In this document: piece by piece, positions 15,257 to 60,589 of the stretch
Layout of the letters: each line of letters opens with the position of its first letter
Numbering within the stretch: the stretch's first letter is position 1
Origin: Malacoraja senta
Taxonomy: Eukaryota
Direction: 5' to 3'
Assembly: GCA_038087875.1 (NCBI GenBank)
Contig: CM075980.1
Location: 15,128,001-15,192,000 of the forward strand
DNA: 64,000 nucleotides
Notes under the pieces: generated by a model
The model's input: the letters and a program-made list of their open reading frames with translations, nothing else
Database searches by the model: none
Told to the model about the DNA's origin: nothing
Program-made: the position numbers and the translations under genes

Positions 15257-15257
<1 letters not shown>

Positions 15258-17474: not shown

Positions 17475-18570
17475 ACTGCAGATGCTGGAAAAATCGAAGG
17501 TAGACAAAAATGGTGGAGAAACTCGGCTGGTGAGGCAGCATCTATGGAGTGAAGGAATAGGTGACGTTTCGGGTCAAGACCCTTCTTTAGACTGATGTGG
17601 GGGGGGGGGGGAAGAAGAAAGGAAGGGGCGGAGGCTGTGGGAGAGCTGGGAAGAGGAGGGGAAGGAGGGAGAAAGCAAGGACTACCTGAAATTAGAGAAG
17701 TCAATGGTCATACCACTGGGGTGTAAACTACCCAAGCGAAATATGAGGTACTGCTCCTTCAATTTGCGGTGGAACTCACTCTGGCCATGGAGGAGGCCCA
17801 GGACAGAAAGGTCGGATACGGAATGGGAGGGGGAGTTGAAGTGCTGAGTCGCCGGGAGATCGGGTTCGTTAATGCGAACTGTGCGGAGGTGTTGGGTGAA
17901 GCGATCGCCAAGTCTGCGTTGGTCTCACCGATGTAGAGCAGTTGACACCTAGAGCAGCGGATGCAATAGATGAGGTTGGAGGAGGTGCAGGTGAACCTCT
18001 GTCTCACCAGGAAAGACTGCTTGGGTCCTTGGATGGAGTCGAGGGGGGAGGTAGAGCGACAAGTGTAGCATTTCCTACGGTTGCAAGGGAAAGTACCAGG
18101 GGAGGGGGTGGTTTGGGTGGGAAAGGACGAATTGACCAGGGAGTTGCGGAGGGAGCGGTCTCTGCGGAAAGCAGACAGGGGAGGAGATGGAAAGATGTGG
18201 CCAGTGGTGGGATCCTGTTGGAGGTGGCGAAAATGTCGGAGGATTATCTGTTGTATGTGGCGGCTGATAGGGTGGAAGGTGAGGACAAGGGGGACTCTGC
18301 CCTTGTTACGAGTGGGGGGATGGGGAATGAGAGCGGGGCTACGGGATATAGAAGAGACCCTGGTGAGAGCCCCATCTAAAGTTGAAGAGGGGAAGCCCCG
18401 TTCCCTAAAGAATGAGGACATCTCCGATGCCCTGGTTTGGAACACCTCATCCTGGGTGCAGATGCGGCGTAGACGGAGGAATTGGGAGTCGGGGATAGAG
18501 TCCTTACAGGAAGCAGGTTGGGTAGAAGTGTAGTCCAGATAGCCATGGGAGTCAGTGGGTTTGTTGAACT
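17475..18570 (-). mobile_element. Penelope-like retroelement 3' fragment (RT C-terminus/linker plus GIY-YIG endonuclease, frameshifted); duplicated at ~27325-28420
   Basis: ORF 17759..18445 contains PLVLTFHP, C..C linker and NLIYCIRCSRCQLLYIGET; a 1-bp deletion follows YIGET. Confidence 0.88.
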
Positions 18571-19455
18571 CAGCAGGTCAATCAGTGTCATTTGTTGGGG
18601 GGGGGGGGGGGGGGGAATTGTCAATATTCCGGGCAATGCATGGGTTTCGACCCAAGATATCATCAATTCCTTTCCTTTACCCACTGAGTTCTTTCAGTAG
18701 TTTGTTTGGTGAATACTGGTGTAGGCCATGTTAATATACGTGCAAGGACTTGATGGCTTGTACTTTGAAGTCAGAATTTACACACATTTGCAAATACCCT
18801 GAGACAATGCCCCAGCAGGTCTGAGTGGAAGGATCCATCTTTGGGAATTATGGCCAAGAACAATCCTTTGGTTATTGTCAGTCTTAAAAAAATCAGGAAA
18901 ACCAGAACAAAAGGTAGCAATTTGATAGCTGAGAGCGTGAGGTTTATCGCAATTGCCCTAAATAACTCTATCCCATTAACATTCTTTTGTTTGAAAACCA
19001 CAAAACACAGACCATGTTTCAAGTTGTAGGTAATTGCCGTGCTTGTGTGGGCCAGACTTGGAAAGTGATTTTATGCAGCTTTGTCCTGTCTCTTGCTGAA
19101 GATGGTGGCTCGACTTCTATGGTCTCATTGTGATGAGTTTGATTGATTCCCTCCCATCTCTTTTGCATAAAAATTCATTTAAAGCATTTTGTTTAATACA
19201 AAACAGAAGCCAGCTTCTCAACTTTAGTGGTGATTCTGAAAGTTCAACCACATATAAGATAACTAAGTACTGAACCTATTTTGAAATTGCTTCGTCATTA
19301 AATGACCACAATAACCTCTAGTTGGAGGGCTGATCGTGTGGTGCAAATGCATTGATTACTTGTGGGAATTTGGATCTAAACCTTTGCGTCTACAAATAGA
19401 AGCTATGATTTGAATGTGCTTGTGTCTAATTACTTTTTGTTTGAAAACCACACAG

Positions 19456-19549
19456 TTATCATCTCCTGGCCCAAGTCAACGCCAGCAAGGCTGACTTCCG
19501 AGCAGCTATGCAGCACGAGAAGCAGGCCTACATCATCTACAGGGATCGG
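19456..19549 (+). CDS. CLUH: CLUH-like coding exon (YHLLAQVNASKADFRAAMQHEKQAYIIYRDR), copy 1
   Basis: Matches [28 protein letters not shown]. Confidence 0.93.
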
Positions 19550-20079
19550 GTTAGTTATTCCAAAATGTTTTCTCTGTGTTGTAGTCCGGTGGCATTTAAG
19601 TCAACCTCTGAAAGTTACCTTGGCCGATTGCACTCAGTGGAATATAAGGCGAGGGTGCACACTACATGTTGCTGAATCAACTCCAATTTTCTGTCACAGC
19701 AAGTAACGCATTCTGCAATAAGTGAAGATTTCCCACGTTACAAAGCAACTTATGTTGTCAAATATGATGTTAAATAGGTGCCATCATCTATTCTTATTAC
19801 TTGTATATACTACAGGATATGACTCAATTGTGTTTTTTTCTGTCCACACTACCTTAACCCATTCTTTCACAGAGGGGCAGTTTGTGATGCAGACAGGAAC
19901 ACGTATTTTGACGTATACTGCATTTAATAGAAATAGACATTTGGTCCAAAATAAGTCCTCCCCTTTACATATCACCAGCATTCTGTACTGCCAATTGACA
20001 ATCTTGGAAAACCCCAAAACACTGAATATTTGGAAATATGGCAAAATTAATTCATTTGGATTTTTATTTTCAAAAATAG

Positions 20080-20214
20080 CTTGGGGAGACGCACCTTAAA
20101 ACGAAAGGAAGTTCTGAGTTCCTGAAGCATTTTACTCAGCAGGCAGTTAATCTCCAGAGAACCATGAATGAAATTTACAAGAATGGATCAAATGCTAATC
20201 TTTCTCCAGTACAG
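20080..20214 (+). CDS. CLUH: CLUH-like coding exon ([45 protein letters not shown]), copy 1
   Basis: Matches [37 protein letters not shown]. Confidence 0.94.
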
Positions 20215-20264
20215 GTTGGTGCCCCTTATTAACCTACCTTGCCTTTTGTTCCAGTGTAAAATTT

Positions 20265-20700
20265 CCTTGCCTGGATTAGAGGGTTTCAACTACAGGGAGA
20301 GGGATAGACTTGGATTGTTTCTCTGGAACATCAGAGGTTGAGGGGAGACTTGATAGAGGTATATACAATTATGAAAAGCATAGGTATGATAGAAGTCAGA
20401 ACCTTTTTTCCCCAGGGTGAAAATGTTCAGTACTAGATGGTATAGCTGTAAGGTGAGAGGGATGGTTTATGGAGCTGCGTGGGGCAAGTTATTTTACACG
20501 GATGGTGGTGGGGTCTGGAACACCTTGCCAGGGATGGTGGTGGAGGCAGATATGATAGCTGCGTTTAAGAGACTTTTGGATAAGCACATGAAAGTGCAGG
20601 AACAGAAGGATATGGATCACATGCAGGTAGAAGAGATGTGTTTAGCTATGTTCAGCACAAACATTGTGGGCTGAAGGGCCAGTCGTTTGCTATATTGTTC
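20265..20700 (+). mobile_element. CR1-type LINE 3' fragment (degenerate); duplicated at ~30115-30550
   Basis: RL..LGLFSLE.RRLRGDL.EVY-like remnant, VWNTLPG.VVEA..I..FKRLLD.HM, and an HE1-like 3' tail. Confidence 0.75.
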
Positions 20701-20756
20701 CATGTTTCATAGACAAACAATCTGATTGGCTATGTTTGATATTGAATTTTTTCCAG

Positions 20757-20830
20757 ACCACATCCCTGAGTAAAAAAATGATGCTGGAACAGCTTAATAT
20801 AATCAATGGAATTGTTCTCATGGAAACGAG
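20757..20830 (+). CDS. CLUH: CLUH-like coding exon (TTSLSKKMMLEQLNIINGIVLMET), copy 1
   Basis: Matches LEQLNVINGI. Confidence 0.9.
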
Positions 20831-21154
20831 GTAGGCCTGCCTTTCATTTCCTATCTTCCCCTTGAGACTATGGTGCAATCTAAATTAATATTGTTTAGGG
20901 TTGAGAACTAATATCAGCGCAGGAGTATTCAAACATCATCAATCAACAACATGGCCAGAGCAATGAATAATTATATCAAGGAATGTAAATACTTGACCTT
21001 TCTAAGAAATGTATAATTTATGTCTAAATTGTGAGTGGTATTATGTCGTAAAAGCACTCGACTCCCTGATAATCCATCTGTCTAGAATGCTGCCAAACTG
21101 GATCCTACACAATTTTAAAAAGTCGATCGCAGTAAGGAAACGTTATAGTGCGTC

Positions 21155-21745
21155 GGATGGAACTGCAGATGCTGATTTACACCTTAGACACAAAATGCTG
21201 GAGTAACTCAGCAGGACAGGCAGCATCTCTAGATAGAATGGGTGATGTTTTGGGTCGAGACCAGACTGAGAGTCAGGAAGAGGGCACCACAGAGATAAGG
21301 AAGTGTAAGAGATCAAATGAGATGAAGAATAGATCATTGTTAGCTGGAAGATGACACAAAGCAGAGATAAAATGTAATCAAGGGGACAGTCAGACTGGTC
21401 AGAGAACTGGGAAGGGGGAGGGATGGAGAGAGAGGTAAAGCAAGGGTTATTTGATGTTAGATAAGTCAATATTCATACCACTGGGGTGTAAGCTGCCCAA
21501 GCGAAATATGAGGTGCTGTTCCTCCAGTTTGCACTGGGCCTCACTCTGGCAATGGAGGCCCAGGACAGAAAGGTCAATGTGGGAAAGGGAAGGGGGTTTA
21601 ACATTGAGCAACCGGGAAATCAGGTAGGTTTAGGCAAACTGAGTTGAGGTGTTCAGCGAAACGATCGGCGAGCCTGCGCTTGGTCTCGCTGATATACAGG
21701 AGTCCACACCTGGAACAGCGGATACAGTAGATGAGGTTGGAGGTC
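21155..21745 (-). mobile_element. Penelope-like GIY-YIG fragment with terminus; duplicated at ~31005-31596
   Basis: NLIYCIRCSRCGLLYISETKRRLADRFAEHL. Confidence 0.85.
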
Positions 21746-22572
21746 CGAAAGGTCAGTGTGCTGCATTTATGTCTCTGCTGTGCAGCAATGAAGATACTAC
21801 TGATTGGTCTTTCATTTCTAAGCAAAGGGGGGGGGGGGGGGGGGTGTCACCATGCCTTGCTCACAGTCACAGTTCTGTGAATCTTTTGGACATCTGGATT
21901 CATGACGTTGTGAGTGATCTTGTCTTCAGTTCTTTCATTGTCGGATATCCTGCCAACGTGCTTGAATAATGTTTTGTCTTTCAGTGAGTCAACTCAAGCT
22001 GAGTTGAAAAATAGCCATCGATGAGTAAAATATAGACTGGGAAAGCAATGACAAAGGGGGCAAAGAGGGCGAGCAGTTTTATGTGTGCTCAGGAGATGGT
22101 TCTTGATGGGGGTGGGGGAAGGAATGTCTAGCAAACAGTGATCATTTCATAGGGCGTAAAATAGAAAAAGGGTACGGACCACACCAAGGCAAGAATAACC
22201 AATTGGAGAAGGCCCAGGTAAATTGGAAATGACGTTTGGTAGACTAAACTAATTTTTAAAATGGGAGGAATTTAAAGTGAAGATGTTTTGCCCATTCTGT
22301 TAACGTTGCTCGTCCAGGAGGCAAATTAAACCATGGTGTTGGAAGAGGGTTGGATAAGATTCTGAAAGGAAATAATTTGTCGGGCTGCAGGGTAGGATGG
22401 ATATTGCATTGAGCTGCATTGTTCCTATGTGAAAGACAAATAATTACCGTACAATCTGATGGTATGAACATTGAAATCTCCAATGTTAGATAACTAAGCT
22501 ACAAACAACCCCTTTTCCCTCCTCCCACCATTTCCCATGTTCTTCAACGGCAATGATGAAGTGATTTTTTTT

Positions 22573-22772
22573 NNNNNNNNNNNNNNNNNNNNNNNNNNNN
22601 NNNNNNNNNNNNNNNNNNNNNNNNNNNNNNNNNNNNNNNNNNNNNNNNNNNNNNNNNNNNNNNNNNNNNNNNNNNNNNNNNNNNNNNNNNNNNNNNNNNN
22701 NNNNNNNNNNNNNNNNNNNNNNNNNNNNNNNNNNNNNNNNNNNNNNNNNNNNNNNNNNNNNNNNNNNNNNNN
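22573..22772. other. Assembly gap (200 N)
   Basis: Run of N. Confidence 1.
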
Positions 22773-24061
22773 GTGGGCATCAACAACTTTCAACATGTTT
22801 AATGTCTTTTAATGTGGCAAAATAGCCAAGGTACAGTACATGGGTAATTGAAAAAACTGATAAACTCCAGAAGGAGATATCAGAACATAGGACATAAGGT
22901 ATGGCAAAAGTGGTAGATTTTAGAATGGGGAAAGTAGTGGAGAATGTTTGGGATGAAATTCCAGAGCTGGTGCTAAACACCAATGATGGAGCAATCAAAG
23001 TCAGAGATGTGGAGTGGTCAGAATTAGAACGTAGATATCTGACAGTTTAAAGGCCCGTGGAGATTGTGGAGATAGAAGTTGAGATTGTGGAGAATTTAAA
23101 ATAAGGAATTCAAGTTTTACAATCAAGGCACTGCTTAAACAAGGGCCAGTAAAGATCAACGAGCATGGGGAATGAATGGGACACAGACAGCATAGAGCGA
23201 AGAAGACACATTGGAATAGTCAGATCTGGACTTGAGGTAAAAGGTTCCACCACCCACAGAGCCTGTGGTGAGGCTGGAGTTGAGTGATGTTGAAGTTATG
23301 GCCTCACTGTGTGAAGGATAAGAGGGTTAAAACTTGATGCAAAATCAAGATATACTAATGCTTGCAGTCTGGTTCAGTTTTGCATAGATACCAAGAAGAG
23401 CAGAAATAAGGGTCTCGCCCCGAAACATCACCCATTCCTTCTCTCCAGAGATGCTGCCTATCCCGCTGAGTTACTCCAGCATTTTCTGTCTATCTTTGGT
23501 TTAAACCAGCATCTGCAGTTCCTTCTTACACAGAGCAAAAATATTATTGGATAGATGACAGAATATGTGATGGGCACCGAAGACAATGACGTCAGTCTTT
23601 TCAATGTTTAGTTGGAGGACGTGTTTGCTTATTTCTGTCCTGTCCACAATGTCACCAAGTAATCCGACAAGATGGAAGGGTTATGGTGAGATCAAGCTGT
23701 TATGCTCCCAGTGTACATGTGGATATTGATGCAGATGGATGAGGTGGAGAGATGGAGCAAAACCTCAGAGAGACATAAAGGAGCAGGTGCAGGAAGAAAA
23801 ATCCACTCCTGTAGATTATTTGGCAATGACTGAGTGAATGCAATTCACCCGGATGAATGATGGAAGAGAATTGTCAGGGCAGGATGGTGTGGTTGGCTTT
23901 GGCAAAGACTGCAGACAGGTTGAGAATGATGAGGAGGGATAGTTTACATTTGTCACTGTTGCATTGTGAAGAATCCCGATAGATCAGAGCGATTTCTCCC
24001 AAATGCTATTGCATTTTCTCTCTCTCTTTCTGAACACTGGTGCCCTTCCTCTTTCACACAG

Positions 24062-24141
24062 GCGATAAAGAACCAGCAAAAAGCTGTCATAATCAGCGAG
24101 CGAATCCTTGGCTTTGATCATCCAATACAATTCGTGAATAT
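24062..24141 (+). pseudogene. Duplicate copy of CLUH-like exon 14221..14301 with a 1-bp deletion (80 nt, frameshift)
   Basis: GATCATCCAAT here versus GATCATCCCAAT in copy 1; lies in the duplicated block. Confidence 0.8.
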
Positions 24142-25034
24142 GTGAGTTATCATTTCATTCGCTCTTCATTTGAAACATGTTGGATTATATGTTTACATGC
24201 ACACTGTTCTTATTCAACTGTCATTATTTACACAAACCCAGACGTTCTTCCTGATATTGTCAATGTGGAACCGCAGTGTAGTAAACATGCACACCTGCAT
24301 GCAGTAGAAAGTGAACGATAACTGTGGGCTCTTCTTTGCCTGCAAACTGGGGAAGCTGAGGCCCGTAGTAATGTCATGCTTGCACACGTTGCTGAAGCTG
24401 GTTAACACTATGCAACAAAGCTCCCATGTAGTAAAGACCAGGAATGGAATGTGAGAGCCTTGTCATATAATGCGATTGGGTGTGCGATTATCTAAGATTA
24501 TTGTCTCTGGTGAAATTGCTGGAAATGTGGACATGTCAGTTGTGTTTCTCCATGCATTTAATTTTTGTCCATAAATCCCTTTAGGAATGCACACTAAAGG
24601 GCCAATCAGATATGTAGCTGGTATCACTGTCGGTGGCTGTTATTTGCCCGTCTCTGCAGTAACTCTGACATAGAGGCAAGCAGCGCCTGTGGTTGATCAT
24701 GTTTCATAATGTAAATAACTGGAAAGAAACATTTAATTATTACACACTGCTCCATTATTACCCATGCTACTGCCGAGCCTTTTCATCGCTCACTCTATAA
24801 TTAAACTCTTGTCCAGTTTCCTTCCTTTGACCAGTGCATCACTTTGTCTTTGGTGTAGCTTTGCAGAGCAGTTTGTTGCTGTGGATTTGAAAAGAAAGGA
24901 TGCTGGTTCTCTGCTGAATGGAATTATTTCATTTCTCCTTCAGATAGAGAAGGAGACCATTTGGCCCTTTGAGTCTTTGTTGGCTATCAGATGTATCCTG
25001 TCGATCCTATTCTCCCAGTTACTTCCCTGTATCA

Positions 25035-25107
<73 letters not shown>

Positions 25108-25251
25108 AGTCCATCAGCTTTCTACTGATTCTCTCACCACCCACCTGTGTGGTGGCAATGCCTGGGTACCGATCAATGCCCAGCACCCAGGTAGCGATGC
25201 CCTGGGACGCGACTGTTCCGAGCACTGCATTATCCTGTTCTACCTCCACAG

Positions 25252-25377
25252 GTCAGGCTGGGTCTCTACTGCTTTGCCAACAATCAGAATGCAACAGCAC
25301 TGAGGCTGCTGTACCGTGCCCAGCAACTGATGCTGACTGTCTGTGGAGAGGACCACCCTGAAGTAGCTGTTCTTGAT
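25252..25377 (+). CDS. CLUH: Duplicate copy of CLUH-like exon 15402..15527
   Basis: Same sequence as copy 1, inside the duplicated block (likely assembly artefact). Confidence 0.6.
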
Positions 25378-26700
25378 GTAAGTGTCGAATGGCAGAATCT
25401 CTTTTGGGCAGAAGAGGGTTTAATGCCATCATTAACTGTGTGGATGGAAGGAAGTAGGGAGATCCGTGTTAAAAACTCTTTCCAGGTGGTATTCATTTGG
25501 GGTTGGATAAGAGTCGCCGACCTTATGAACTTCATGATTGGAAGGTAGTGTAAATTACATTTAATTAGCACCTCTACTGCAGAAGTTCATAAGCAGTTCT
25601 GTGGCGCTCCATGGTGGTGGAAGGAGTTGTTGTTAATGTTAAATTAGAGCTAATTGGGACTGTGAAACTAGCATAATCTAAAGAGTTACCTTTAGGGGCC
25701 ATCTCAAAATAGGAGAATGAGGCAGAAAGATTCATGAAAGAATTACATAATTGATAGCCCACATACTAATGATGACTAGGTGGTTGTTGAAAGGTGTGGT
25801 GCATTGAAGAGCAGAATAAGGTGGAATTCACCAAGCTAGGCAAAAGTGGGGTCATGAGAGAGTGTACCAAGTTATTAAACTGGGATCATCCACGGTAGTG
25901 GAGGGAAATAGAATTGGAAGCTCGAGATGGGATGAATAAGAGTTTTGCCAGAACGTGTTCTGAGACAGTGGCACAAACAGCCATTGTTACAAAAGTAAAG
26001 GCAAATGCTGTTTATAATGGAGAGGCAATGACTTTGAAATTCAGTCTGGAATCGGATAGGATAGCAAATTTCAACCCAGAATGTGGCCAAGGACTGAATA
26101 GAGCTGGAAACATAAATTGCAATATGTGATTGGCCAAAGATTGTCTAATGTGTAACTGGAGAGAATTGTGGCTCCCTCAAATTGGCTTCATATATTTAAG
26201 TTGAATGCTGTGACTGTACTTTTCTAACCTGATGCCGATGTTACAGAGGGATTATTCTGCTTGTGGTATTATTGCTCAATTTAATAATCTCCTGAATAAC
26301 CTATGTTACTCCACTGACTTTCATCCACAACTATTGCACATTGTTTTGCAAGCAGGGACACATAAAGCTCCAATAATTCTAATGGAACATTCACCCCTTC
26401 CCTTTCCCCGTGCAAGGGTGGATGATGAGCCTGCATTCACCATTTGGGTAACCAGGGATGAGAGTGGAAGTTATATGCGTTGGACTGCTTCTACCATGCA
26501 TGTTTCCAGTTATTCAACCTGCAGATCACACTGGAGCTTCCCTGCATCTTCCCAACACACACCCCTACACAACATCACCTTTAATGGTGCTGAAGGAGAG
26601 TGCGTCAACACAGATGCTCAATTATTGTAAAGTGGAGAGTCTAGCAGGCTGGACTTAATCTGATTATTGTAAAATTCACTTTGTTTCCATGTTCCTACAG

Positions 26701-26822
26701 ATTAACATCGGTCTTGTGCTCCAAGCTGCACTGGATTATGACCTTGCAATTCGATTTTTGCAGAAAGGTCTGGAATTAAACTCCAAATATTCTGGACCCC
26801 AGGCGCTACAGACTGCCCTTAG
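26701..26822 (+). CDS. CLUH: Duplicate copy of CLUH-like exon 16851..16972
   Basis: Same sequence as copy 1, inside the duplicated block. Confidence 0.6.
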
Positions 26823-29306
26823 GTAGGGTTGAAGATAAATTTAGCACAAAAATTCTATGGGATTAATTTACCTGCAAACCCACATTTCCTTATCAACTTT
26901 CTGGGGTGGCGTGCACAGTGGAGGCCGTCCAGAAGAGATTCCCCAGGCGAATCTCAGTGATGATTAGGTTTTCTTATCATGAGAGGTTCAAGAATTTGAA
27001 TCTGTTTTATTTGGAGCTTGGAATAACGAGGGGTGAGCTTCGTGAAACAGACAATTTCCGTAGAGGGCAAGATAGGTCGACACTGAGATATTTCTACGTG
27101 AGAGAATCACGAAAGGGGGAATGTCGTTGCAAAATAAGGGAACAGTCAATAAAAACCAAGGTGGAATTTTCTTATGGTGATGGTGGTGGACCTGTGAAAT
27201 TCTCCAATGGTGGGAGCCAGATATCAGAGGTATTTAAAGTGGAAGTGGGTGGACACAAGAGACTGCAGATTTTGGGATGTGGAACAAAGAACAATCTGCT
27301 GTAGGACAAAATGTTTACGAATGAACTGCAGATGCTGGAAAAATCGAAGGTAGACAAAAATGGTGGAGAAACTCGGCTGGTGAGGCAGCATCTATGGAGT
27401 GAAGGAATAGGTGACGTTTCGGGTCAAGACCCTTCTTTAGACTGATGTGGGGGGGGGGGAAGAAGAAAGGAAGGGGCGGAGGCTGTGGGAGAGCTGGGAA
27501 GAGGAGGGGAAGGAGGGAGAAAGCAAGGACTACCTGAAATTAGAGAAGTCAATGGTCATACCACTGGGGTGTAAACTACCCAAGCGAAATATGAGGTACT
27601 GCTCCTTCAATTTGCGGTGGAACTCACTCTGGCCATGGAGGAGGCCCAGGACAGAAAGGTCGGATACGGAATGGGAGGGGGAGTTGAAGTGCTGAGTCGC
27701 CGGGAGATCGGGTTCGTTAATGCGAACTGTGCGGAGGTGTTGGGTGAAGCGATCGCCAAGTCTGCGTTGGTCTCACCGATGTAGAGCAGTTGACACCTAG
27801 AGCAGCGGATGCAATAGATGAGGTTGGAGGAGGTGCAGGTGAACCTCTGTCTCACCAGGAAAGACTGCTTGGGTCCTTGGATGGAGTCGAGGGGGGAGGT
27901 AGAGCGACAAGTGTAGCATTTCCTACGGTTGCAAGGGAAAGTACCAGGGGAGGGGGTGGTTTGGGTGGGAAAGGACGAATTGACCAGGGAGTTGCGGAGG
28001 GAGCGGTCTCTGCGGAAAGCAGACAGGGGAGGAGATGGAAAGATGTGGCCAGTGGTGGGATCCTGTTGGAGGTGGCGAAAATGTCGGAGGATTATCTGTT
28101 GTATGTGGCGGCTGATAGGGTGGAAGGTGAGGACAAGGGGGACTCTGCCCTTGTTACGAGTGGGGGGATGGGGAATGAGAGCGGAGCTACGGGATATAGA
28201 AGAGACCCTGGTGAGAGCCCCATCTAAAGTTGAAGAGGGGAAGCCCCGTTCCCTAAAGAATGAGGACATCTCCGATGCCCTGGTTTGGAACACCTCATCC
28301 TGGGTGCAGATGCGGCGTAGACGGAGGAATTGGGAGTCGGGGATAGAGTCCTTACAGGAAGCAGGTTGGGTAGAAGTGTAGTCCAGATAGCCATGGGAGT
28401 CAGTGGGTTTGTTGAACTCAGCAGGTCAATCAGTGTCATTTGTTGGGGGGGGGGGGGGGGGGGGGGGGAATTGTCAATATTCCGGGCAATGCATGGGTTT
28501 CGACCCAAGATATCATCAATTCCTTTCCTTTACCCACTGAGTTCTTTCAGTAGTTTGTTTGGTGAATACTGGTGTAGGCCATGTTAATATACGTGCAAGG
28601 ACTTGATGGCTTGTACTTTGAAGTCAGAATTTACACACATTTGCAAATACCCTGAGACAATGCCCCAGCAGGTCTGAGTGGAAGGATCCATCTTTGGGAA
28701 TTATGGCCAAGAACAATCCTTTGGTTATTGTCAGTCTTAAAAAATCAGGAAAACCAGAACAAAAGGTAGCAATTTGATAGCTGAGAGCGTGAGGTTTATC
28801 GCAATTGCCCTAAATAACTCTATCCCATTAACATTCTTTTGTTTGAAAACCACAAAACACAGACCATGTTTCAAGTTGTAGGTAATTGCCGTGCTTGTGT
28901 GGGCCAGACTTGGAAAGTGATTTTATGCAGCTTTGTCTGTCTCTTGCTGAAGATGGTGGCTCGACTTCTATGGTCTCATTGTGATGAGTTTGATTGATTC
29001 CCTCCCATCTCTTTTGCATAAAAATTCATTTAAAGCATTTTGTTTAATACAAAACAGAAGCCAGCTTCTCAACTTTAGTGGTGATTCTGAAAGTTCAACC
29101 ACATATAAGATAACTAAGTACTGAACCTATTTTGAAATTGCTTCGTCATTAAATGACCACAATAACCTCTAGTTGGAGGGCTGATCGTGTGGTGCAAATG
29201 CATTGATTACTTGTGGGAATTTGGATCTAAACCTTTGCGTCTACAAATAGAAGCTATGATTTGAATGTGCTTGTGTCTAATTACTTTTTGTTTGAAAACC
29301 ACACAG

Positions 29307-29400
29307 TTATCATCTCCTGGCCCAAGTCAACGCCAGCAAGGCTGACTTCCGAGCAGCTATGCAGCACGAGAAGCAGGCCTACATCATCTACAGGGATCGG
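29307..29400 (+). CDS. CLUH: Duplicate copy of CLUH-like exon 19456..19549
   Basis: Same sequence as copy 1, inside the duplicated block. Confidence 0.6.
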
Positions 29401-29930
29401 GTTAGTTATTCCAAAATGTTTTCTCTGTGTTGTAGTCCGGTGGCATTTAAGTCAACCTCTGAAAGTTACCTTGGCCGATTGCACTCAGTGGAATATAAGG
29501 CGAGGGTGCACACTACATGTTGCTGAATCAACTCCAATTTTCTGTCACAGCAAGTAACGCATTCTGCAATAAGTGAAGATTTCCCACGTTACAAAGCAAC
29601 TTATGTTGTCAAATATGATGTTAAATAGGTGCCATCATCTATTCTTATTACTTGTATATACTACAGGATATGACTCAATTGTGTTTTTTTCTGTCCACAC
29701 TACCTTAACCCATTCTTTCACAGAGGGGCAGTTTGTGATGCAGACAGGAACACGTATTTTGACGTATACTGCATTTAATAGAAATAGACATTTGGTCCAA
29801 AATAAGTCCTCCCCTTTACATATCACCAGCATTCTGTACTGCCAATTGACAATCTTGGAAAACCCCAAAACACTGAATATTTGGAAATATGGCAAAATTA
29901 ATTCATTTGGATTTTTATTTTCAAAAATAG

Positions 29931-30065
29931 CTTGGGGAGACGCACCTTAAAACGAAAGGAAGTTCTGAGTTCCTGAAGCATTTTACTCAGCAGGCAGTTA
30001 ATCTCCAGAGAACCATGAATGAAATTTACAAGAATGGATCAAATGCTAATCTTTCTCCAGTACAG
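29931..30065 (+). CDS. CLUH: Duplicate copy of CLUH-like exon 20080..20214
   Basis: Same sequence as copy 1, inside the duplicated block. Confidence 0.6.
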
Positions 30066-30607
30066 GTTGGTGCCCCTTATTAACCTACCTTGCCTTTTGT
30101 TCCAGTGTAAAATTTCCTTGCCTGGATTAGAGGGTTTCAACTACAGGGAGAGGGATAGACTTGGATTGTTTCTCTGGAACATCAGAGGTTGAGGGGAGAC
30201 TTGATAGAGGTATATACAATTATGAAAAGCATAGGTATGATAGAAGTCAGAACCTTTTTTCCCCAGGGTGAAAATGTTCAGTACTAGATGGTATAGCTGT
30301 AAGGTGAGAGGGATGGTTTATGGAGCTGCGTGGGGCAAGTTATTTTACACGGATGGTGGTGGGGTCTGGAACACCTTGCCAGGGATGGTGGTGGAGGCAG
30401 ATATGATAGCTGCGTTTAAGAGACTTTTGGATAAGCACATGAAAGTGCAGGAACAGAAGGATATGGATCACATGCAGGTAGAAGAGATGTGTTTAGCTAT
30501 GTTCAGCACAAACATTGTGGGCCGAAGGGCCAGTCGTTTGCTATATTGTTCCATGTTTCATAGACAAACAATCTGATTGGCTATGTTTGATATTGAATTT
30601 TTTCCAG

Positions 30608-30681
30608 ACCACATCCCTGAGTAAAAAAATGATGCTGGAACAGCTTAATATAATCAATGGAATTGTTCTCATGGAAACGAG
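30608..30681 (+). CDS. CLUH: Duplicate copy of CLUH-like exon 20757..20830
   Basis: Same sequence as copy 1, inside the duplicated block. Confidence 0.6.
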
Positions 30682-32486
30682 GTAGGCCTGCCTTTCATTT
30701 CCTATCTTCCCCTTGAGACTATGGTGCAATCTAAATTAATATTGTTTAGGGTTGAGAACTAATATCAGCGCAGGAGTATTCAAACATCATCAATCAACAA
30801 CATGGCCAGAGCAATGAATAATTATATCAAGGAATGTAAATACTTGACCTTTCTAAGAAATGTATAATTTATGTCTAAATTGTGAGTGGTATTATGTCGT
30901 AAAAGCACTCGACTCCCTGATAATCCATCTGTCTAGAATGCTGCCAAACTGGATCCTACACAATTTTAAAAAGTCGATCGCAGTAAGGAAACGTTATAGT
31001 GCGTCGGATGGAACTGCAGATGCTGATTTACACCTTAGACACAAAATGCTGGAGTAACTCAGCAGGACAGGCAGCATCTCTAGATAGAATGGGTGATGTT
31101 TTGGGTCGAGACCAGACTGAGAGTCAGGAAGAGGGCACCACAGAGATAAGGAAGTGTAAGAGATCAAATGAGATGAAGAATAGATCATTGTTAGCTGGAA
31201 GATGACACAAAGCAGAGATAAAATGTAATCAAGGGGACAGTCAGACTGGTCAGAGAACTGGGAAGGGGGAGGGATGGAGAGAGAGGTAAAGCAAGGGTTA
31301 TTTGATGTTAGATAAGTCAATATTCATACCACTGGGGTGTAAGCTGCCCAAGCGAAATATGAGGTGCTGTTCCTCCAGTTTGCACTGGGCCTCACTCTGG
31401 CAATGGAGGCCCAGGACAGAAAGGTCAATGTGGGAAAGGGAAGGGGGTTTAACATTGAGCAACCGGGAAATCAGGTAGGTTTAGGCAAACTGAGTTGAGG
31501 TGTTCAGCGAAACGATCGGCGAGCCTGCGCTTGGTCTCGCTGATATACAGGAGTCCACACCTGGAACAGCGGATACAGTAGATGAGGTTGGAGGTCCGAA
31601 AGGTCAGTGTGCTGCATTTATGTCTCTGCTGTGCAGCAATGAAGATACTACTGATTGGTCTTTCATTTCTAAGCAAAGGGGGGGGGGGGGGGGTGTCACC
31701 ATGCCTTGCTCACAGTCACAGTTCTGTGAATCTTTTGGACATCTGGATTCATGACGTTGTGAGTGATCTTGTCTTCAGTTCTTTCATTGTCGGATATCCT
31801 GCCAACGTGCTTGAATAATGTTTTGTCTTTCAGTGAGTCAACTCAAGCTGAGTTGAAAAATAGCCATCGATGAGTAAAATATAGACTGGGAAAGCAATGA
31901 CAAAGGGGGCAAAGAGGGCGAGCAGTTTTATGTGTGCTCAGGAGATGGTTCTTGATGGGGGTGGGGGAAGGAATGTCTAGCAAACAGTGATCATTTCATA
32001 GGGCGTAAAATAGAAAAAGGGTACGGACCACACCAAGGCAAGAATAACCAATTGGAGAAGGCCCAGGTAAATTGGAAATGACGTTTGGTAGACTAAACTA
32101 ATTTTTAAAATGGGAGGAATTTAAAGTGAAGATGTTTTGCCCATTCTGTTAACGTTGCTCGTCCAGGAGGCAAATTAAACCATGGTGTTGGAAGAGGGTT
32201 GGATAAGATTCTGAAAGGAAATAATTTGTCGGGCTGCAGGGTAGGATGGATATTGCATTGAGCTGCATTGTTCCTATGTGAAAGACAAATAATTACCGTA
32301 CAAATCTGATGGTATGAACATTGAAATCTCCAATGTTAGATAACTAAGCTACAAACAACCCCTTTTCCCTCCTCCCACCATTTCCCATGTTCTTCAACGG
32401 CAATGATGAAGTGATTTTTTTTGGGGATTAAAATTTAAATGTTTCCACTACTTTCTTCAACTGATCAACTTTAATGTTTATTTTAG

Positions 32487-38002: not shown

Positions 38003-38164
38003 CTGAAACAAAGTTCAATAGTTTGAATGCATTGAAAGCTTTGATTATTTTAGTGATTGGCATCTTCAAAGGCAAGGCCAATGATGAGAAGTCCCACTCT
38101 CCATATCTCTGATTTCCATGAGTGTTAAATATAAACGTTTGGAAAAGATTGGGTAATTATTGAT

Positions 38165-38451
38165 TGATTAAAAGATACAGCATGGAGACAGGCCATTTGG
38201 CCCTCCGACTGCACACCGTCGATCACCCGTTTACAATAGTTCTACATTATCCTACTTTCTCGTCCACTCCTATACACTAGAGGCAATTTACAATGGCCAA
38301 TTACCCTACAAACCCGCACCTGTGGAACGTAGGAGGAAGCCCACATGGTCACAGTGAGAACATGCAAACTCCACATGCACAGCACTCGAGGTCAGGATTG
38401 AACCCGTGTGACTGGCACTGTGGTTCTACCGGGTACTCCACTATGCTGCCC
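38165..38451 (-). mobile_element. tRNA-derived SINE (HE1-like), degenerate
   Basis: Similar to the reverse complement of 12506..12768. Confidence 0.7.
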
Positions 38452-38573
38452 AAAGTTCAGCATCACCTCCCTGCTATTGTATTTATTGCCCTGCCCTGGC
38501 AGAATCCTACAGCCTTCATAACCACTTTATCCACCTCCACCCCCAACTTTCTGAGGATCATTGGACTTGTAAC

Positions 38574-38601
38574 CAAAGATCATAGAGCTCTATGATCTTT
38601 G
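38574..38601. mobile_element. 28-bp perfect palindrome with an 8-bp TSD (CTTGTAAC); putative TIR-only micro-transposon
   Basis: CAAAGATCATAGAG|CTCTATGATCTTTG; direct repeats at 38566-38573 and 38602-38609. Confidence 0.75.
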
Positions 38602-39054
38602 CTTGTAACTAAGGTACCTCTGTTCCCACCCCTAACTTCCTACCACTTGTGGGGTATGTCCTAGCCCCAGTCCCAAAATAAATCACCTCACATCCACCAG
38701 GATTAAATTCCATCTGACATTGCCAAGGCTATTTCACCAACACATGGCATTTCCTCCATAACTTTTGCGTTTTGTTTTTAAATGCCAAGGCTTGCTTTGC
38801 TTCCAGAGCCCTGTGGAGGAGGGTGTTGAAGCACGATGGGCTTTACAGAGCCTCACTAGTCTGCAGGTTGCCCTTTGCTGCTGCAGTGTGTGGGTCTGGA
38901 TGCCCCGCACTGAGTGATGTGTCTGCACTCGGGCCCTCCCCTCCCTCCTGTCGGTACCGGACAGGGGCTCCCTCCCGAGATACGCCCTGGCCCGGCTCCA
39001 ACCCTCCTTCTCATCTCCCCGGTCCCGGCCCTGGCCCTGGCCTGACTGACTTAC

Positions 39055-39517: not shown

Positions 39518-39585
39518 GTGAGTGCGGCTGTTCCCGGGCCCCGCGATCCCGGCCCCTCGCCGAGCCATCTCCAGTCCCCGTCCCC

Positions 39586-41893
39586 ACGCCGTCCCGGTAC
39601 CCCGCCGCCCCGGTACCCCACCGTCCCGGTACCCCACCGTCCCGGTACCCCGCCGTCCCGGTACCCCGCCGCCCCGGTACCCCGCCGCCCCGGTACCCCG
39701 CCGCCCCGGTACCCCGCCGCCCCGTTACCCCACCGTCCCGGTACCCCGCCGCCCCGATACCCCGCCGTCCCGGTACCCCGGTACCCCACCGTCCCGGTAC
39801 CCCGCCGCCCCGATACCCCGCCGTCCCGGTACCCCGCCGTCCCGGTACCCCACCGTCCCGGTACCCCGCCGCCCCGGTACCCCGGTACCCCGCCGTCCCG
39901 GTACCCCACCGTCCCGGTACCCCGCCGCCCCGATACCCCGCCGTCCCGGTACCCCGCCGTCCCGGTACCCCACCGTCCCGGTACCCCGCCGCCCCGATAC
40001 CCCGCCGTCCCGGTACCCCGCCGTCCCGGTACCCCGCCGCCCCGATACCCCGCCGTCCCGGTACCCCGCCGTCCCGGTACCCCGCCGCCCCGGTACCCCG
40101 CCGCCCCGGTACCCCGCCGTCCCGGTACCCCGGTACCCCGCCGTCCCGGTACCCCGCCGTCCCGGTACCCCGCCGCCCCGGTACCCCGCCGTCCCGGTAC
40201 CCCGGTACCCCGCCGTCCCGGTACCCCGCCGCCCCGGTACCCCACCGTCCCGGTACCCCGCCGCCCCGATACCCCGCCGTCCCGGTACCCCGCCGTCCCG
40301 GTACCCCGCCGTCCCGGTACCCCGCCGCCCCGGTACCCCGGTACCCCGCCGTCCCGGTACCCCGCCGCCCCGGTACCCCGCCGCCCCGGTACCCCGCCGC
40401 CCCGGTACCCCGCCGCCCCGGTACCCCGCCGTCCCGGTACCCCGCCGCCCCGATACCCCGCCGTCCCGGTACCCCGCCGTCCCGGTACCCCGCCGCCCCG
40501 GTACCCCGGTACCCCGCCGTCCCGGTACCCCGCCGCCCCGATACCCCGCCGCCCCGTTACCCCACCGTCCCGATACCCCGCCGTCCCGGTACCCCGCCGT
40601 CCCGGTACCCCGCTGCCCCGGTACCCCGGTACCCCGCCGCCCCGGTACCCCGCCGCCCCGATACCCCGCCGCCCCGTTACCCCACCGTCCCGGCACCCCG
40701 CCGCCCCGGTACCCCGGTACCCCGGTACCCCACCGTCCCGGTACCCCGCCGCCCCGATACCCCGCCGTCCCGGTACCCCGCCGTCCCGGTACCCCACCGT
40801 CCCGGTACCCCGCCGCCCCGGTACCCCGGTACCCCGCCGTCCCGGTACCCCACCGTCCCGGTACCCCGCCGCCCCGATACCCCGCCGTCCCGGTACCCCG
40901 CCGTCCCGGTACCCCACCGTCCCGGTACCCCGCCGCCCCGATACCCCGCCGTCCCGGTACCCCGCCGTCCCGGTACCCCGCCGCCCCGATACCCCGCCGT
41001 CCCGGTACCCCGCCGTCCCGGTACCCCGCCGCCCCGGTACCCCCGCCGCCCCGGTACCCCGCCGTCCCGGTACCCCGGTACCCCGCCGTCCCGGTACCCC
41101 GCCGTCCCGGTACCCCGCCGCCCCGGTACCCCGCCGTCCCGGTACCCCGGTACCCCGCCGTCCCGGTACCCCGCCGCCCCGGTACCCCACCGTCCCGGTA
41201 CCCCGCCGCCCCGATACCCCGCCGTCCCGGTACCCCGCCGTCCCGGTACCCCGCCGTCCCGGTACCCCGCCGCCCCGGTACCCCGGTACCCCGCCGTCCC
41301 GGTACCCCGCCGCCCCGGTACCCCGCCGCCCCGGTACCCCGCCGCCCCGGTACCCCGCCGCCCCGGTACCCCGCCGTCCCGGTACCCCGCCGCCCCGATA
41401 CCCCGCCGTCCCGGTACCCCGCCGTCCCGGTACCCCGCCGCCCCGGTACCCCGGTACCCCGCCGTCCCGGTACCCCGCCGCCCCGATACCCCGCCGCCCC
41501 GTTACCCCACCGTCCCGATACCCCGCCGTCCCGGTACCCCGCCGTCCCGGTACCCCGCTGCCCCGGTACCCCGGTACCCCGCCGCCCCGGTACCCCGCCG
41601 CCCCGATACCCCGCCGCCCCGTTACCCCACCGTCCCGGCACCCCGCCGCCCCGGTACCCCGGTACCCCGGTACCCCGCCGTCCCGGTACCCCGCCGCCCC
41701 GATACCCCGGTACCCCGCCGTCCCGGTACCCCGCCGCCCCGGTACCCCGCCGCCCCGATACGCCGCCGTCCCAGTACCCCGCCGCCCCGGTACCCCGGTG
41801 TCCCGCCGCCCCGTTACCCCAATACCCCGCCGTCCCGGTACCCCGCCGAGCCGTCCCCTCCGCCCCCTCACCCCGCCGAGCCGTCCCCTCCGC
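39586..41893. repeat. GC-rich minisatellite, 16-bp unit GYCCCGGTACCCCGCC with 8-bp half units, roughly 140 units
   Basis: Directly visible tandem array filling TFIP11 intron 1; source of the 725-1051 aa low-complexity ORFs. Confidence 0.97.
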
Positions 41894-41923
41894 TCTGTTC
41901 ACCGAATCTCACCCTCAGGCACG

Positions 41924-45441: not shown

Positions 45442-45702
45442 TAAAGAGTCCAGAGAGGAAACTAATAATTTCGCTGGTCAATAATCATACGAAACACCTG
45501 CAATTACACCTCTGCTCATTAGTCAAAAGTACAGTAGCTTTAATCATTGGGAGAAAGGCAGAACTTGTGTGGAACCTTCAGGTTTGTGTGTATTTGATGC
45601 TCCCCTCTGTCCCCACTTCCAGCAGTCACTCAACAGTACGTTGACGTTAACAATTGCGGTTAGCTTGTAATGGCTCTGATTTGAAATTTGTGCTCGTCAT
45701 AG

Positions 45703-45862
45703 CTCCAAAGATTACACAGCTCCGGTGAACTTCATCAGCGCTGGACTCCGTCGAACAACAGATGAGGAAAATGAAAAAGAGAAGGATTCCGATGAATCTG
45801 ATGAAGAGAAGGTTAAAAGAGAAGAATTTCAAAAAGAGTTTGCGCCACAGAAATTGAAAACT
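45703..45862 (+). CDS. TFIP11: TFIP11 coding exon 2 ([15 protein letters not shown]...PQKLKT)
   Basis: [11 protein letters not shown] motif; canonical sites. Confidence 0.95.
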
Positions 45863-58900: not shown

Positions 58901-59039
58901 GTGGGGAGGAAGGAAGGTCAGCGCTCCTCGGACAACATCGCCTCGGTTGACAACAGCTGCCTTGGCCGTTGGGATTTCCTCGCCACCGCCTCCCTCCTCC
59001 GCCAGCCAACAGCAAGGTGCAGGGCCGAGCGGTGCAGCT

Positions 59040-59067
59040 CAGAGATCCTCTAGCTATAGGATCTTCG
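59040..59067. mobile_element. Second 28-bp near-palindrome with an 8-bp TSD (GTGCAGCT)
   Basis: CAGAGATCCTCTAGCTATAGGATCTTCG; direct repeats at 59032-59039 and 59068-59075. Confidence 0.7.
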
Positions 59068-59081
59068 GTGCAGCTGCTTCA

Positions 59082-59341
59082 GAAGGGTCGGAGCGAATGA
59101 CGGGCCCCGAATAGCGGCAGCAGCGGCCGCGAGAGCGGCTCCATCTCCTCACCCTCCCTGATAGCTGCCGCTGCTTCTTTCAAAACAAACCCTCCCGCAC
59201 GCCGAGGCCTCCCCATCCCTCCCTCCCTCGTCCCGGCCTCGGCGTGCGGGAGGGTTTGTTTTGAAACAAGCAGTGGCCGCTATCAGGGAGGAGGAGGAGA
59301 TGGAGCCGCTGTTCGGGTCCCGTCATTCGCTCCGACCCTTC
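59082..59341. repeat. Long inverted repeat (hairpin), arms of ~110-130 bp, 25-nt loop
   Basis: Perfect 32-bp core stem 59178-59209 / 59235-59266. Confidence 0.9.
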
Positions 59342-60589
59342 CTCACCCCGCACCTAGTATCTTTGCCCCGCAACACAGCCGTCGCCGACACGAAACGTCG
59401 CGTTCCTTTTCTCCAGAGATGCTGCCTGACCCGCGGAGTTACTCCAGTTTTTTGTGCCTATCTTCGGTACAAACCAGTATCTGGTTGCCAAGCCGGTCAA
59501 AATGACTCGGCGTTTTGGTTGCCCGGCGGCGCTTTGAGTGGTCAGGGGCACCCGGGCAACCGCTAATTTCGAGCCCTGTGTATGTATATGGAAAGGGAAG
59601 GAGAAGGAATGAAATTTAGAGAGGAATCTGAAAGGCAAATGCAGCAAAGAGTTGAAAGGAAAATAAGTTTTTTTTTAAGCAGAAATTGTGAATGTTTTGG
59701 AATCCTTTGAATGCAAAATATCTAAAGTCTGAACCTCGGGACCTCCCAATAAGTTTGAGTTAATGAAGTCATTAAAAAGTGTGGTTAATACTAGAAGCAC
59801 TTGCCAAGGTTTGTGCAAATGGGAAAATAGATCCCTTATTTGCTTTGAACAGCATTAATGCAGGCTTCAAAGGGCGTTGAGTAATTGAAAATTGGTTCAC
59901 ACTTGCCGGGCTTGGACTCTGATTATGCGGAGGGGAGGTTTCATTTTAATTGGGAGCTTCTTACAAAACTGGTCCAACCATATCCTGTCGCCAAAGATCG
60001 AGTGCTCCCAAACCCATTACCCTTTCAACACCACTTTACGTTAATCCTGTGCAAAGCCCTGCTCTCCTCCTGCTGTACTGGACACCTGCCACAAACCCCT
60101 GCTTTGCCCCGCCTGCTGCTGCAGCTGCTCCCTGAGAACCAGCCAGCTCCAAGCACGGGCATCGCTGGAAATTGGCAACATGCACTCATCCCCTGAGCAC
60201 CCGATCTCATGGTCTCTCTGATAACCTACCAGATATGATGGAGCCAGCTGTCCCTACCTTTCTTTGGGTGCACAGTCCTCCCAGCCCAGAGATCATGATA
60301 ACAGCTCTGGCCAAGGACCACAGTTGTGAACAACAGTTTAATAAGATTACCAATGAATTATTATATATTTAAATATATTATTATGAAATAAGATGATCAA
60401 ATCTTGGTTACCAGTTGCTACCACCTATTCCCCATTGACTTGGTGCCTCAAGTTGTAGGGTATCAACTGTACAGTGTTTTTCAGCTATCACCTCCTAACT
60501 CGGCGTTTGACTGTAAAGTGCACTTAATCCAAATGCCATTTATTGCCTGTAGAATGCAGACTTTCCTTCATTGTTTTGCCTTTAAACAG

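What the first reader, a model, noticed from the sequence alone, without database searches (positions are those of the whole stretch)
38566..38609. 28-bp perfect palindrome with an 8-bp TSD: a TIR-only micro-transposon candidate
Seen: CTTGTAAC-[CAAAGATCATAGAG CTCTATGATCTTTG]-CTTGTAAC in SRRD intron 1, two 14-bp arms with no spacer. Known: CA...TG ends and 8-bp TSDs with nTnnnnAn bias are hAT-superfamily signatures, but MITEs are normally much longer and ordinary excision footprints do not retain both TIRs. A related 28-mer with its own different TSD is at 59040, so this looks like a family. Inference: either an extremely small mobile unit, or the scar left when the whole interior of a larger element is precisely removed at the central AG|CT. 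Either case would point to an unusual mechanism.
Basis: partly seen in the sequence, partly recalled or inferred. Interest (0 to 1): 0.8.

Follow-up and report, generated by a model that had tools for sequence, protein, structure and literature searches.

The report
P-element excision scar, not a micro-transposon
The 28-bp palindrome with its 8-bp duplication is most likely the scar left when a P-type "cut-and-paste" transposon jumped out and the cell rejoined the two short stubs it left behind, a repair product known from fruit flies but here fixed hundreds of times in a vertebrate genome.

Summary
Window 38566-38609 is CTTGTAAC, a perfect 14+14 palindrome, then CTTGTAAC. The 1.94-Gb genome holds 75 near-identical 28-mers (reversed control 0), mostly at unique sites with their own 8-bp duplications.

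It is not hAT and is probably not a mobile unit. Its ends match the ends of resident elements that encode a P-element/THAP9-type transposase. The 28-mer is one class in a discrete series (28, 30, 31, 33, 35, 38 bp; 31-36 bp for a sister end type). In that series two terminal stubs are joined at a self-complementary dinucleotide, joined blunt, or joined with filler. No stub exceeds 18 nt (sister type) or 20 nt (this type). Published Drosophila P-excision junctions (17-nt staggered cut) have the same anatomy. Sixty-three unique duplications give G-T-Y-n-n-R-A-C, like the fly P target core GTCCGGAC.

Hundreds of copies share its flanks, so it is one old scar carried inside a dispersed repeat. A 12-nt one-armed scar lies at 59354.

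First readers of this scan had already flagged such palindromic inserts elsewhere in this genome as candidate P footprints. My tests support that reading. No occupied allele was seen.

Verdict: new member of a known kind; moderate interest.

The parts
38566..38573 (.). Left copy of the 8-bp target-site duplication, CTTGTAAC
   Evidence: It fits the G-T-Y-n-n-R-A-C target profile at T2, Y3, R6, A7 and C8.
38574..38587 (+). Left stub: the first 14 nt of a P-type terminal inverted repeat (CAAAGATCATAGAG, 'CAT' end type)
   Evidence: The same 14-mer occurs 1,931 times in the genome against 8 for the control. In longer elements it continues as ..CGGAGC...
38588..38601 (-). Right stub: the same 14 nt in inverted orientation. 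The joint lies at the self-complementary GC (positions 14-15 of each stub, window 38587-38588).
   Evidence: 15+15-2 = 28. The 33- and 38-bp classes use this GC and the second GC at positions 19-20.
38602..38609 (.). Right copy of the 8-bp target-site duplication, CTTGTAAC
59032..59075 (-). Second scar ('CCT' end type): GTGCAGCT + 28-mer + GTGCAGCT. It is a diverged copy of one ancestral scar carried in a dispersed repeat.
   Evidence: The core occurs at 1,247 places against 17 for the control. Nearly all of the first 100 listed copies share the flanks GCAGCTGCAC / AGCTGCACCG. The window copy has them on the minus strand.
59346..59373 (+). One-armed scar: CCCCGCAC + CTAGTATCTTTG (the last 12 nt of an 'ACT'-type right end) + CCCCGCAA
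   Evidence: The 12/12 match to the autonomous element's terminus plus a 7/8 flanking repeat stands out, and four control motifs gave 0 such structures.

Best explanation
The 28-mer is a donor-site scar (excision footprint) of a P-superfamily transposon. Steps 2-4 below are inferred from anatomy and from the Drosophila precedent; the rest is shown.

1. A non-autonomous or autonomous P-type element with CAAAGATCATAGAGCGGAGC.. termini inserted at CTTGTAAC and duplicated those 8 bp.
2. A P/THAP9-type transposase later cut it out. As in Drosophila, the cut was staggered: exactly at the tip on one strand, and about 18-20 nt inside the element on the other. Each flank therefore kept a 3' single-stranded stub of the inverted repeat.
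3. The two stubs have the same sequence, so they cannot pair along their length. End-joining paired them at a short self-complementary motif, here the GC at positions 14-15.
4. The flaps were trimmed, the gaps filled and the nicks ligated. Both stubs were joined at the same position, so the product is a perfect 14+14 palindrome between two intact duplications.

Shown here: the structure, the family, the independent sites, the series of junction classes, the cap on stub length, the P-type partner with the same termini, and the P-like target motif.
For: 1. Termini. Five 97.7-98.7% identical copies of an element share a left boundary that starts CAAAGATACTAGAGGA. They carry open frames of 758-786 aa with TNP-like RNase H N and C, the GTP-binding insertion domain and the P-element HTH. 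A THAP exon lies upstream. At least 124 P-transposase matches exist genome-wide. MITEs with the 28-mer's exact end type have interiors like that element's left end.

2. Junction series with exact 14-nt arms.
- CAT type: 28 bp x14; 30, 31, 33, 34, 35, 38, 39, 40, 42 and 51 bp make up 36 places.
- ACT type: 283 short forms. In the first 50 listed, 34 bp (18+18-2) x16, 32 bp x10, 31 bp x3, and blunt 18+18 = 36 bp x1.
- The sizes 28, 33 and 38 are what pairing at the two GC dinucleotides (positions 14-15 and 19-20) predicts, and 30 is what CG (15-16) predicts.

3. Cap. No stub runs past ..GGAGC, which is 20 nt in the CAT type and 18 nt in the ACT type. Longer forms are full stubs plus filler, for example 20+11+20 and 20+25+19. 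True MITEs start at about 93 bp, so the length distribution is bimodal.

4. Independence. 63 different perfect 8-bp duplications were seen.

5. Target motif. The symmetrised profile is G 0.56, T 0.73, Y 0.73, n, against the Drosophila P core GTCCGGAC (PMC2577343).

6. Precedent. Drosophila P transposase makes a 17-nt staggered cut and an 8-bp duplication (PMC7776569). Sequenced P{wa} excision junctions are duplication + up to 17 nt of repeat + (AT/TA microhomology, blunt join or templated insert) + up to 17 nt of repeat + duplication (PMC2895639).
Against: - No site was seen in both states (element present in one allele or species, scar in the other). Contigs of two other organisms lack a 63-nt block that includes the scar, both duplications and 18 nt of flank. 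That is neither a clean empty site nor an occupied one.
- An autonomous partner with exactly the CAT-type ends was not identified.
- The stagger length is inferred from scars, not measured. The cap also coincides with the length of the inverted repeat itself.
- Some complex junctions recur at different sites (for example ..GGAGTATCTC.. twice and ..GGATACTC.. three times). That could mean reproducible repair, or copying of a short form.
Confidence: 0.8

Rival explanations
1. The 28-38-bp palindromes are themselves mobile: 'TIR-only' micro-transposons moved in trans by the resident P transposase, so that identical copies at different sites arose by transposition of the short form.
For: Identical short forms sit at many independent sites, each with its own 8-bp duplication. 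One class dominates each end type (34 bp for ACT, 28 bp for CCT and CAT). A few unusual junctions recur at separate sites. A 38-mer is nested in a 38-mer with an 8-bp duplication, CTCCGCTC/CTTCGCTC.
Against: Many junction classes coexist. Their sizes follow the positions of self-complementary dinucleotides, with blunt and filler-containing variants, as repair products do and as copies of a master element would not. Much of the apparent abundance of one type is hitch-hiking inside another repeat. From established knowledge of Drosophila P: the transposase's THAP domain binds subterminal sites tens of bp inside each end, which a 28-mer lacks, and two ends 0 bp apart could hardly be synapsed. That was not tested here.
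Confidence: 0.08
2. The short forms are internal-deletion derivatives made in place, not end-joined excision stubs. One route is abortive gap repair (synthesis from the sister copy that stops early and is then joined). Another is hairpin or slippage deletion of the interior of a foldback MITE.
For: The family includes long foldback MITEs (186 bp with arms of about 75 bp), which are prone to centre deletions. In Drosophila most wild-type repair products involve incomplete synthesis followed by joining (PMC2895639).
Against: Such processes should give arms of any length. Here there is a sharp cap at 18 or 20 nt and a gap up to about 93 bp. Asymmetric classes (20+15, 18+14, 8+20, 0+12) and blunt full-stub joins are not what hairpin deletion gives. 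The ACT type, whose parent is a 6-kb-plus non-foldback element, shows the same series.
Confidence: 0.08
3. It is a hAT-superfamily element or hAT footprint, as the first reader proposed from the CA..TG ends and the nTnnnnAn duplication.
For: The duplication is 8 bp, with T at position 2 (45 of 63) and A at position 7 (47 of 63), which also fits hAT.
Against: The partner with these termini is P-type. hAT excision forms hairpins on the flanking DNA and leaves no inverted-repeat sequence (established knowledge). The target profile also has G1, Y3, R6 and C8, as in GTCCGGAC.
Confidence: 0.02

Closest known systems
Drosophila melanogaster P-element excision footprints (P{wa} repair junctions, Chan, Yu & McVey 2010, PMC2895639; the 17-nt staggered cleavage of Beall & Rio 1997 as cited in PMC7776569)
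   Same: Both 8-bp duplications are kept. A capped piece of each inverted repeat is kept. Joins are at self-complementary dinucleotides, blunt, or with templated filler. The products are often perfect or near-perfect palindromes of about 30 bp.
   Different: Here the scars are natural, germline-fixed and number in the hundreds in a vertebrate-sized genome. The cap is 18 or 20 nt rather than 17. The microhomologies are GC and CG rather than AT and TA, because the repeat sequence differs. The cut itself was not measured.
Vertebrate P-like elements: zebrafish Pdre2 / zfTHAP9 (PMC10983969)
   Same: 8-bp duplications, a THAP9-type transposase, and internally deleted relatives.
   Different: Pdre2 has 13-bp terminal repeats (CATACCTGTCAAC) and about 50 copies. 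Here the ends are CAAAGAT.., with thousands of termini and over 124 transposase matches, many with open frames. That paper does not describe a genomic census of footprints.
hAT elements and their footprints (Ac/Ds, hobo, Tol2)
   Same: 8-bp duplication with T at position 2 and A at position 7, and CA..TG tips.
   Different: hAT footprints are a few changed bases between the two duplications with no repeat sequence. The coding partner here is not hAT.
MITEs
   Same: Short, non-coding, with inverted ends and duplications at many sites. Real MITEs of this family (93-206 bp) exist in the genome.
   Different: The 28-mer has no interior at all, and it belongs to a heterogeneous junction series rather than a uniform amplified unit.

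Membership tests
P-superfamily excision footprint | Both copies of an 8-bp target-site duplication retained around the scar | tested here: met
   all of the 28-38-bp forms held; about 45 perfect duplications and about 15 with one mismatch, among 77 forms.
P-superfamily excision footprint | Stub sequence equals the tip of elements that encode a P-type (THAP + split RNase H + GTP-binding domain) transposase | tested here: met
   The ACT-type tip is the left boundary of five copies with P-type frames. The window's CAT type differs at 3 of the first 14 positions and was linked only through MITEs with a P-like interior. No CAT-type autonomous copy was identified.
P-superfamily excision footprint | Retained repeat length capped by the staggered cut (17 nt in Drosophila) | tested here: met
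   There is a cap at 18 nt (ACT) and 20 nt (CAT). Blunt 18+18 joins occur, and filler forms keep full stubs. That the cap equals the cut position is inferred.
P-superfamily excision footprint | Junction spectrum of end-joining: short self-complementary microhomology, blunt joins, templated inserts | tested here: met
   compared with Tables 1-3 of PMC2895639.
P-superfamily excision footprint | P-like palindromic target preference (core GTCCGGAC) | tested here: met
   63 unique duplications give G-T-Y-n-n-R-A-C (PMC2577343). This is not discriminating against hAT at positions 2 and 7.
P-superfamily excision footprint | The same site seen occupied by the full element in another allele or species | tested here: inconclusive
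   Organisms G and A lack a 63-nt block spanning the site. A contig of organism B begins inside the right stub. No occupied allele was seen.
hAT superfamily | Partner hAT transposase with the same termini, and a footprint without repeat sequence | tested here: not met
   The partner is P-type. The structure keeps 14 nt of each repeat. A direct search for hAT genes with these ends was not run.
MITE (mobile non-autonomous element) | A uniform unit with its own interior, amplified as such | tested here: not met
   There is no interior, and there are at least 10 length and junction classes per end type.

The most novel reading that the evidence does not exclude
Some of the dominant short forms (the 28-mer and the 34-mer) are not only scars but can be picked up again by the P transposase. 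That would make them the smallest known eukaryotic transposons, consisting of nothing but two abutted terminal repeats. The recurrence of identical complex junctions at separate sites and the 38-in-38 nesting are the observations that leave this open.
Probability: 0.08. Interest if true: 0.8.

Novelty: new member of a known kind. Interest (0 to 1): 0.4.

Why it matters
P elements are the only well-studied eukaryotic cut-and-paste transposons that leave a long, recognisable piece of themselves at the donor site, so their past excisions can be counted and read. This genome holds an unusually rich natural record. Thousands of P-type termini, over 100 transposase matches with open frames, and hundreds of scars together amount to a catalogue of germline end-joining outcomes in a vertebrate. 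The scars give a testable prediction for this family's staggered cut: 18 nt, or 20 nt in the subfamily whose repeat is 2 nt longer, against 17 nt in flies. They also suggest that the cut tracks a sequence position rather than a fixed distance. For annotation the practical point is that such 28-38-bp palindromes with duplications should be labelled as P scars, not as new micro-transposons or hAT relics, and that raw copy counts can be inflated by scars hitch-hiking in other repeats.

Tried and rejected
- **Strict pattern for the 59040 type.** Requiring both arms to be CAGAGATCCTNTAG found nothing. The tips of the window copy are diverged; the consensus is CAAAG.
- **Flanks by padding with N.** R anchors with N{12,12} gaps worked.
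- **Right end of the autonomous element.** So its right repeat, its full length (over 6.2 kb) and its own duplication remain unknown.
- **L061.** It looked as if it might show the right end, but it is a rearranged copy that abuts a MITE and a 46-bp short form without a matching duplication.
- **The 186-bp 'MITE' copies L021-L023.** They sit inside a larger palindromic repeat (flanks CTCAAGAG/CTCTTGAG), so they do not show clean duplications.
- **The 9-nt candidate scar at window 45706.** It is at chance level (about 0.5 expected) and was dropped.
- **Circle-junction reading.** This is rejected because the tips face the flanks, not each other.
- **Literature.** Searches found no census of natural P footprints in vertebrates. 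That is not proof that none exists.

Full report
**1. The observation**

Window 38566-38609 reads CTTGTAAC, then CAAAGATCATAGAG|CTCTATGATCTTTG, then CTTGTAAC: a perfect 28-bp palindrome with no spacer between two identical 8-mers.

It is not chance. No shuffle of the window gives a match at up to 3 mismatches. The 1.94-Gb genome holds 75 places at up to 3 mismatches, 14 of them perfect, against 0 for the reversed pattern.

Of the 14 perfect copies, 9 have a perfect 8-bp flanking repeat and 2 more have one mismatch. The flanks differ from copy to copy, except for L011 and L014, which are one locus assembled twice.

**2. It is one member of a series, not a fixed unit**

I kept the two 14-nt arms exact and let the spacing vary. 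The results:

| Spacing between arms | Places | What they are |
|---|---|---|
| 0 | 14 | The 28-mer |
| 1-30 | 36 | Short forms of 30, 31, 33, 34, 35, 38, 39, 40, 42 and 51 bp, plus compound 57-mers |
| 31-130 | 16 | Mostly real MITEs of 93-150 bp |

- In longer forms the arm continues CAAAGATCATAGAG-CGGAGC.
- The common sizes are those produced when two copies of that 20-nt stub pair at a self-complementary dinucleotide. GC at 14-15 with GC at 14-15 gives 28. GC at 19-20 with GC at 14-15 gives 33. GC at 19-20 with GC at 19-20 gives 38. CG at 15-16 with itself gives 30.
- Other forms are blunt joins (15+20 = 35) or full stubs with filler (20+11+20 = 51; 20+25+19 = 64).
- No stub runs beyond position 20.
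- All short forms present in the DNA I hold (28, 29, 30, 33, 34, 36 and 38 bp) have 8-bp flanking repeats.

**3. The partner is a P element**

- The arm 14-mer occurs 1,931 times, against 8 for the control.
- The Pfam P-transposase HTH domain (PF12017) matches at least 124 places, many in open frames of up to 790 aa.
- Five copies, 97.7-98.7% identical, share a left boundary that begins CAAAGATACTAGAGGA.
- Their 758-786-aa frames carry TNP-like RNase H N and C, the GTP-binding insertion domain and the P HTH. An upstream exon carries a THAP domain, E 1.5e-10. The nearest feature-space clusters are named P transposase or THAP9.
- MITEs with the window's exact end type have interiors that resemble this element's left end.
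- This 'ACT' tip occurs 2,275 times, against 5 for the control.

**4. The sister end type repeats the pattern at larger scale**

With ACT arms there are 283 short forms. Among the first 50 listed, the 34-mer (18+18 with the terminal GC overlapped) occurs 16 times, the 32-mer 10 times and the 31-mer 3 times. There is one blunt 18+18 36-mer and several forms with filler. No stub runs beyond ..GGAGC (18 nt), although the element itself continues AAGATG.

A flank-revealing pattern listed 77 of these forms. Almost all are at unique sites. About 45 have perfect 8-bp repeats and about 15 have repeats with one mismatch, across seven size classes.

Different junctions at different sites cannot be copies of one another. 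They are independent events.

**5. Match to known chemistry**

- Drosophila P transposase cuts with an unusually long 17-nt stagger and makes 8-bp duplications (PMC7776569; PMC10983969).
- The donor flanks therefore keep 17-nt non-complementary 3' tails.
- Sequenced P{wa} excision junctions have this form: duplication, up to 17 nt of repeat, then AT or TA microhomology or a blunt join or a templated insert, up to 17 nt of repeat, duplication (PMC2895639, Tables 1-3).
- The series here has the same anatomy, with GC and CG in place of AT and TA because the repeat sequence differs.
- The symmetrised profile of 63 unique duplications is G 0.56, T 0.73, Y 0.73, n. That is G-T-Y-n-n-R-A-C, the outline of the fly P target core GTCCGGAC (PMC2577343).

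**6. Mechanism proposed for the window's 28-mer**

A CAT-type element inserted at CTTGTAAC. It was excised by a P-type transposase, which left stubs of at most 20 nt. The stubs were trimmed to 15 nt, paired at GC, filled in and ligated.

The stagger lengths (18 nt, and 20 nt where the repeat carries two extra bases) are inferred from the caps. The cap falls at the homologous ..GAGC in both types, which suggests the cut tracks sequence position rather than distance from the tip. That is inference.

**7. The second element, at 59040**

Its 22-bp core occurs at 1,247 places, against 17 for the control. There are 416 places with exact cores, and the 28-bp junction makes up about 68% of the first 50 listed.

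However, nearly all of the first 100 listed copies share the same flanks, GCAGCTGCAC|28-mer|AGCTGCACCG. The window copy has those flanks on its minus strand, plus two substitutions inside the 28-mer.

So this is one old scar (duplication AGCTGCAC) inside a dispersed repeat that later amplified. A few independent CCT-type scars do exist, with duplications ATTCATAC and GTCCAAAT. Raw counts of such palindromes therefore overstate the number of events.

In the window this copy lies next to a 260-bp foldback (59082-59341). On the other side of the foldback is a one-armed scar: CCCCGCAC, the last 12 nt of an ACT-type right end, then CCCCGCAA (59346-59373). Four control motifs gave no such structures.

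**8. Other genomes**

Public runs of several coded organisms hold part of the stretch. Contigs of organisms G and A join 38527 to 38628 with 28 intervening letters that align 25/28 to 38537-38564.

They therefore lack 38565-38627: one base, both duplications, the 28-mer and 18 nt of right flank. The left breakpoint sits at the edge of the duplication, and an AC microhomology is present.

This is neither a clean empty site nor an occupied one. It could be a different, deletion-type repair of the same insertion, or an unrelated deletion. I cannot tell which.

A contig of organism B starts inside the right stub and continues through the duplication, so B has at least that end. No occupied allele was seen. 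That is the main gap in the case.

**9. Rivals**

- **Re-mobilised micro-transposon.** Not excluded (identical forms at many sites, a few recurring complex junctions, a 38-mer nested in a 38-mer). The heterogeneity of junctions and the lack of any subterminal sequence argue against it.
- **In-place internal deletion (abortive gap repair or hairpin loss).** This should give arms of any length and mostly symmetric products. The cap, the empty zone up to about 93 bp and the asymmetric classes argue against it.
- **hAT.** Contradicted by the partner element and by the retained repeats.

**10. Limits**

- The organism was not identified here. Earlier notes of this scan call it a cartilaginous fish, and I did not verify that or the 'SRRD intron 1' label.
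Class counts come from the first 50-100 listed places, and tool counts are lower bounds.
- Earlier first-stage notes (s1-187576, s1-177984) had proposed P excision footprints for similar inserts elsewhere in this genome. I reached the same idea from the sequence before reading them (note) and tested it independently.

Noticed in passing
window 12932-22572 and 22773-32422: Two 9.66-kb blocks, 99.7% identical, are separated exactly by the 200-N gap at 22573-22772. This looks like a false duplication (a haplotype assembled twice around a gap) rather than a real tandem duplication.
   Followed up: partly
window 39550-41900: A tandem array of about 2.3 kb, with self-matches at many offsets at 85-95% identity. 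The unit was not determined.
   Followed up: no
window 38123-38450: Contig depth is 3-4 orders of magnitude above the neighbouring sequence in all four runs, with many loose ends. This is a very high-copy interspersed repeat about 120 bp upstream of the scar.
   Followed up: no
window 59082-59341: A 260-bp foldback (arms of 37 nt at 95% and 76 nt at 93% complementarity) lies between the 59040 scar and the one-armed scar at 59354. It may be the body of the dispersed repeat that carries the 59040 scar.
   Followed up: partly
L060:5345-5396 (the same place in L061-L065): Every sampled copy of the autonomous P element carries inside itself a 36-bp hybrid short form between GTCGGAAT repeats: an ACT-type stub joined to a GATTATAG-type stub. 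A second 38-bp form lies about 70 bp upstream. So a P-type element once inserted into, and left, the ancestor of this P family.
   Followed up: partly
G000 C731:144690-144773, with copies on C2215, C4238 and C4582: A 38-bp short form is nested in another 38-bp short form, with an 8-bp duplication CTCCGCTC/CTTCGCTC. It is present in several copies, presumably inside a larger repeat.
   Followed up: no
window 38565-38627, against contigs of organisms G and A: The orthologous sequence lacks a 63-nt block that begins 1 nt before the left duplication and ends 18 nt after the right one, and also lacks 9 nt at 38528-38536. This may be an alternative deletion-type repair of the same insertion. It is unexplained.
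   Followed up: partly
L021, L022, L023 (G000 C1:24476486, 42221721, 37854232): A 186-bp foldback MITE with CAT-type ends and arms of about 75 bp sits inside a larger palindromic repeat (flanks CTCAAGAG/CTCTTGAG and beyond). L023 carries a 145-bp insertion at its centre.
   Followed up: partly
L060:2483-4609: A 708-aa open frame with a reverse-transcriptase domain lies just upstream of the P copy. It is an unrelated retroelement.
   Followed up: no
window 45698-45722: CATAGCTC + CAAAGATTA + CACAGCTC could be a 9-nt one-armed scar, but one such hit is expected by chance (about 0.5), so it was not counted.
   Followed up: yes
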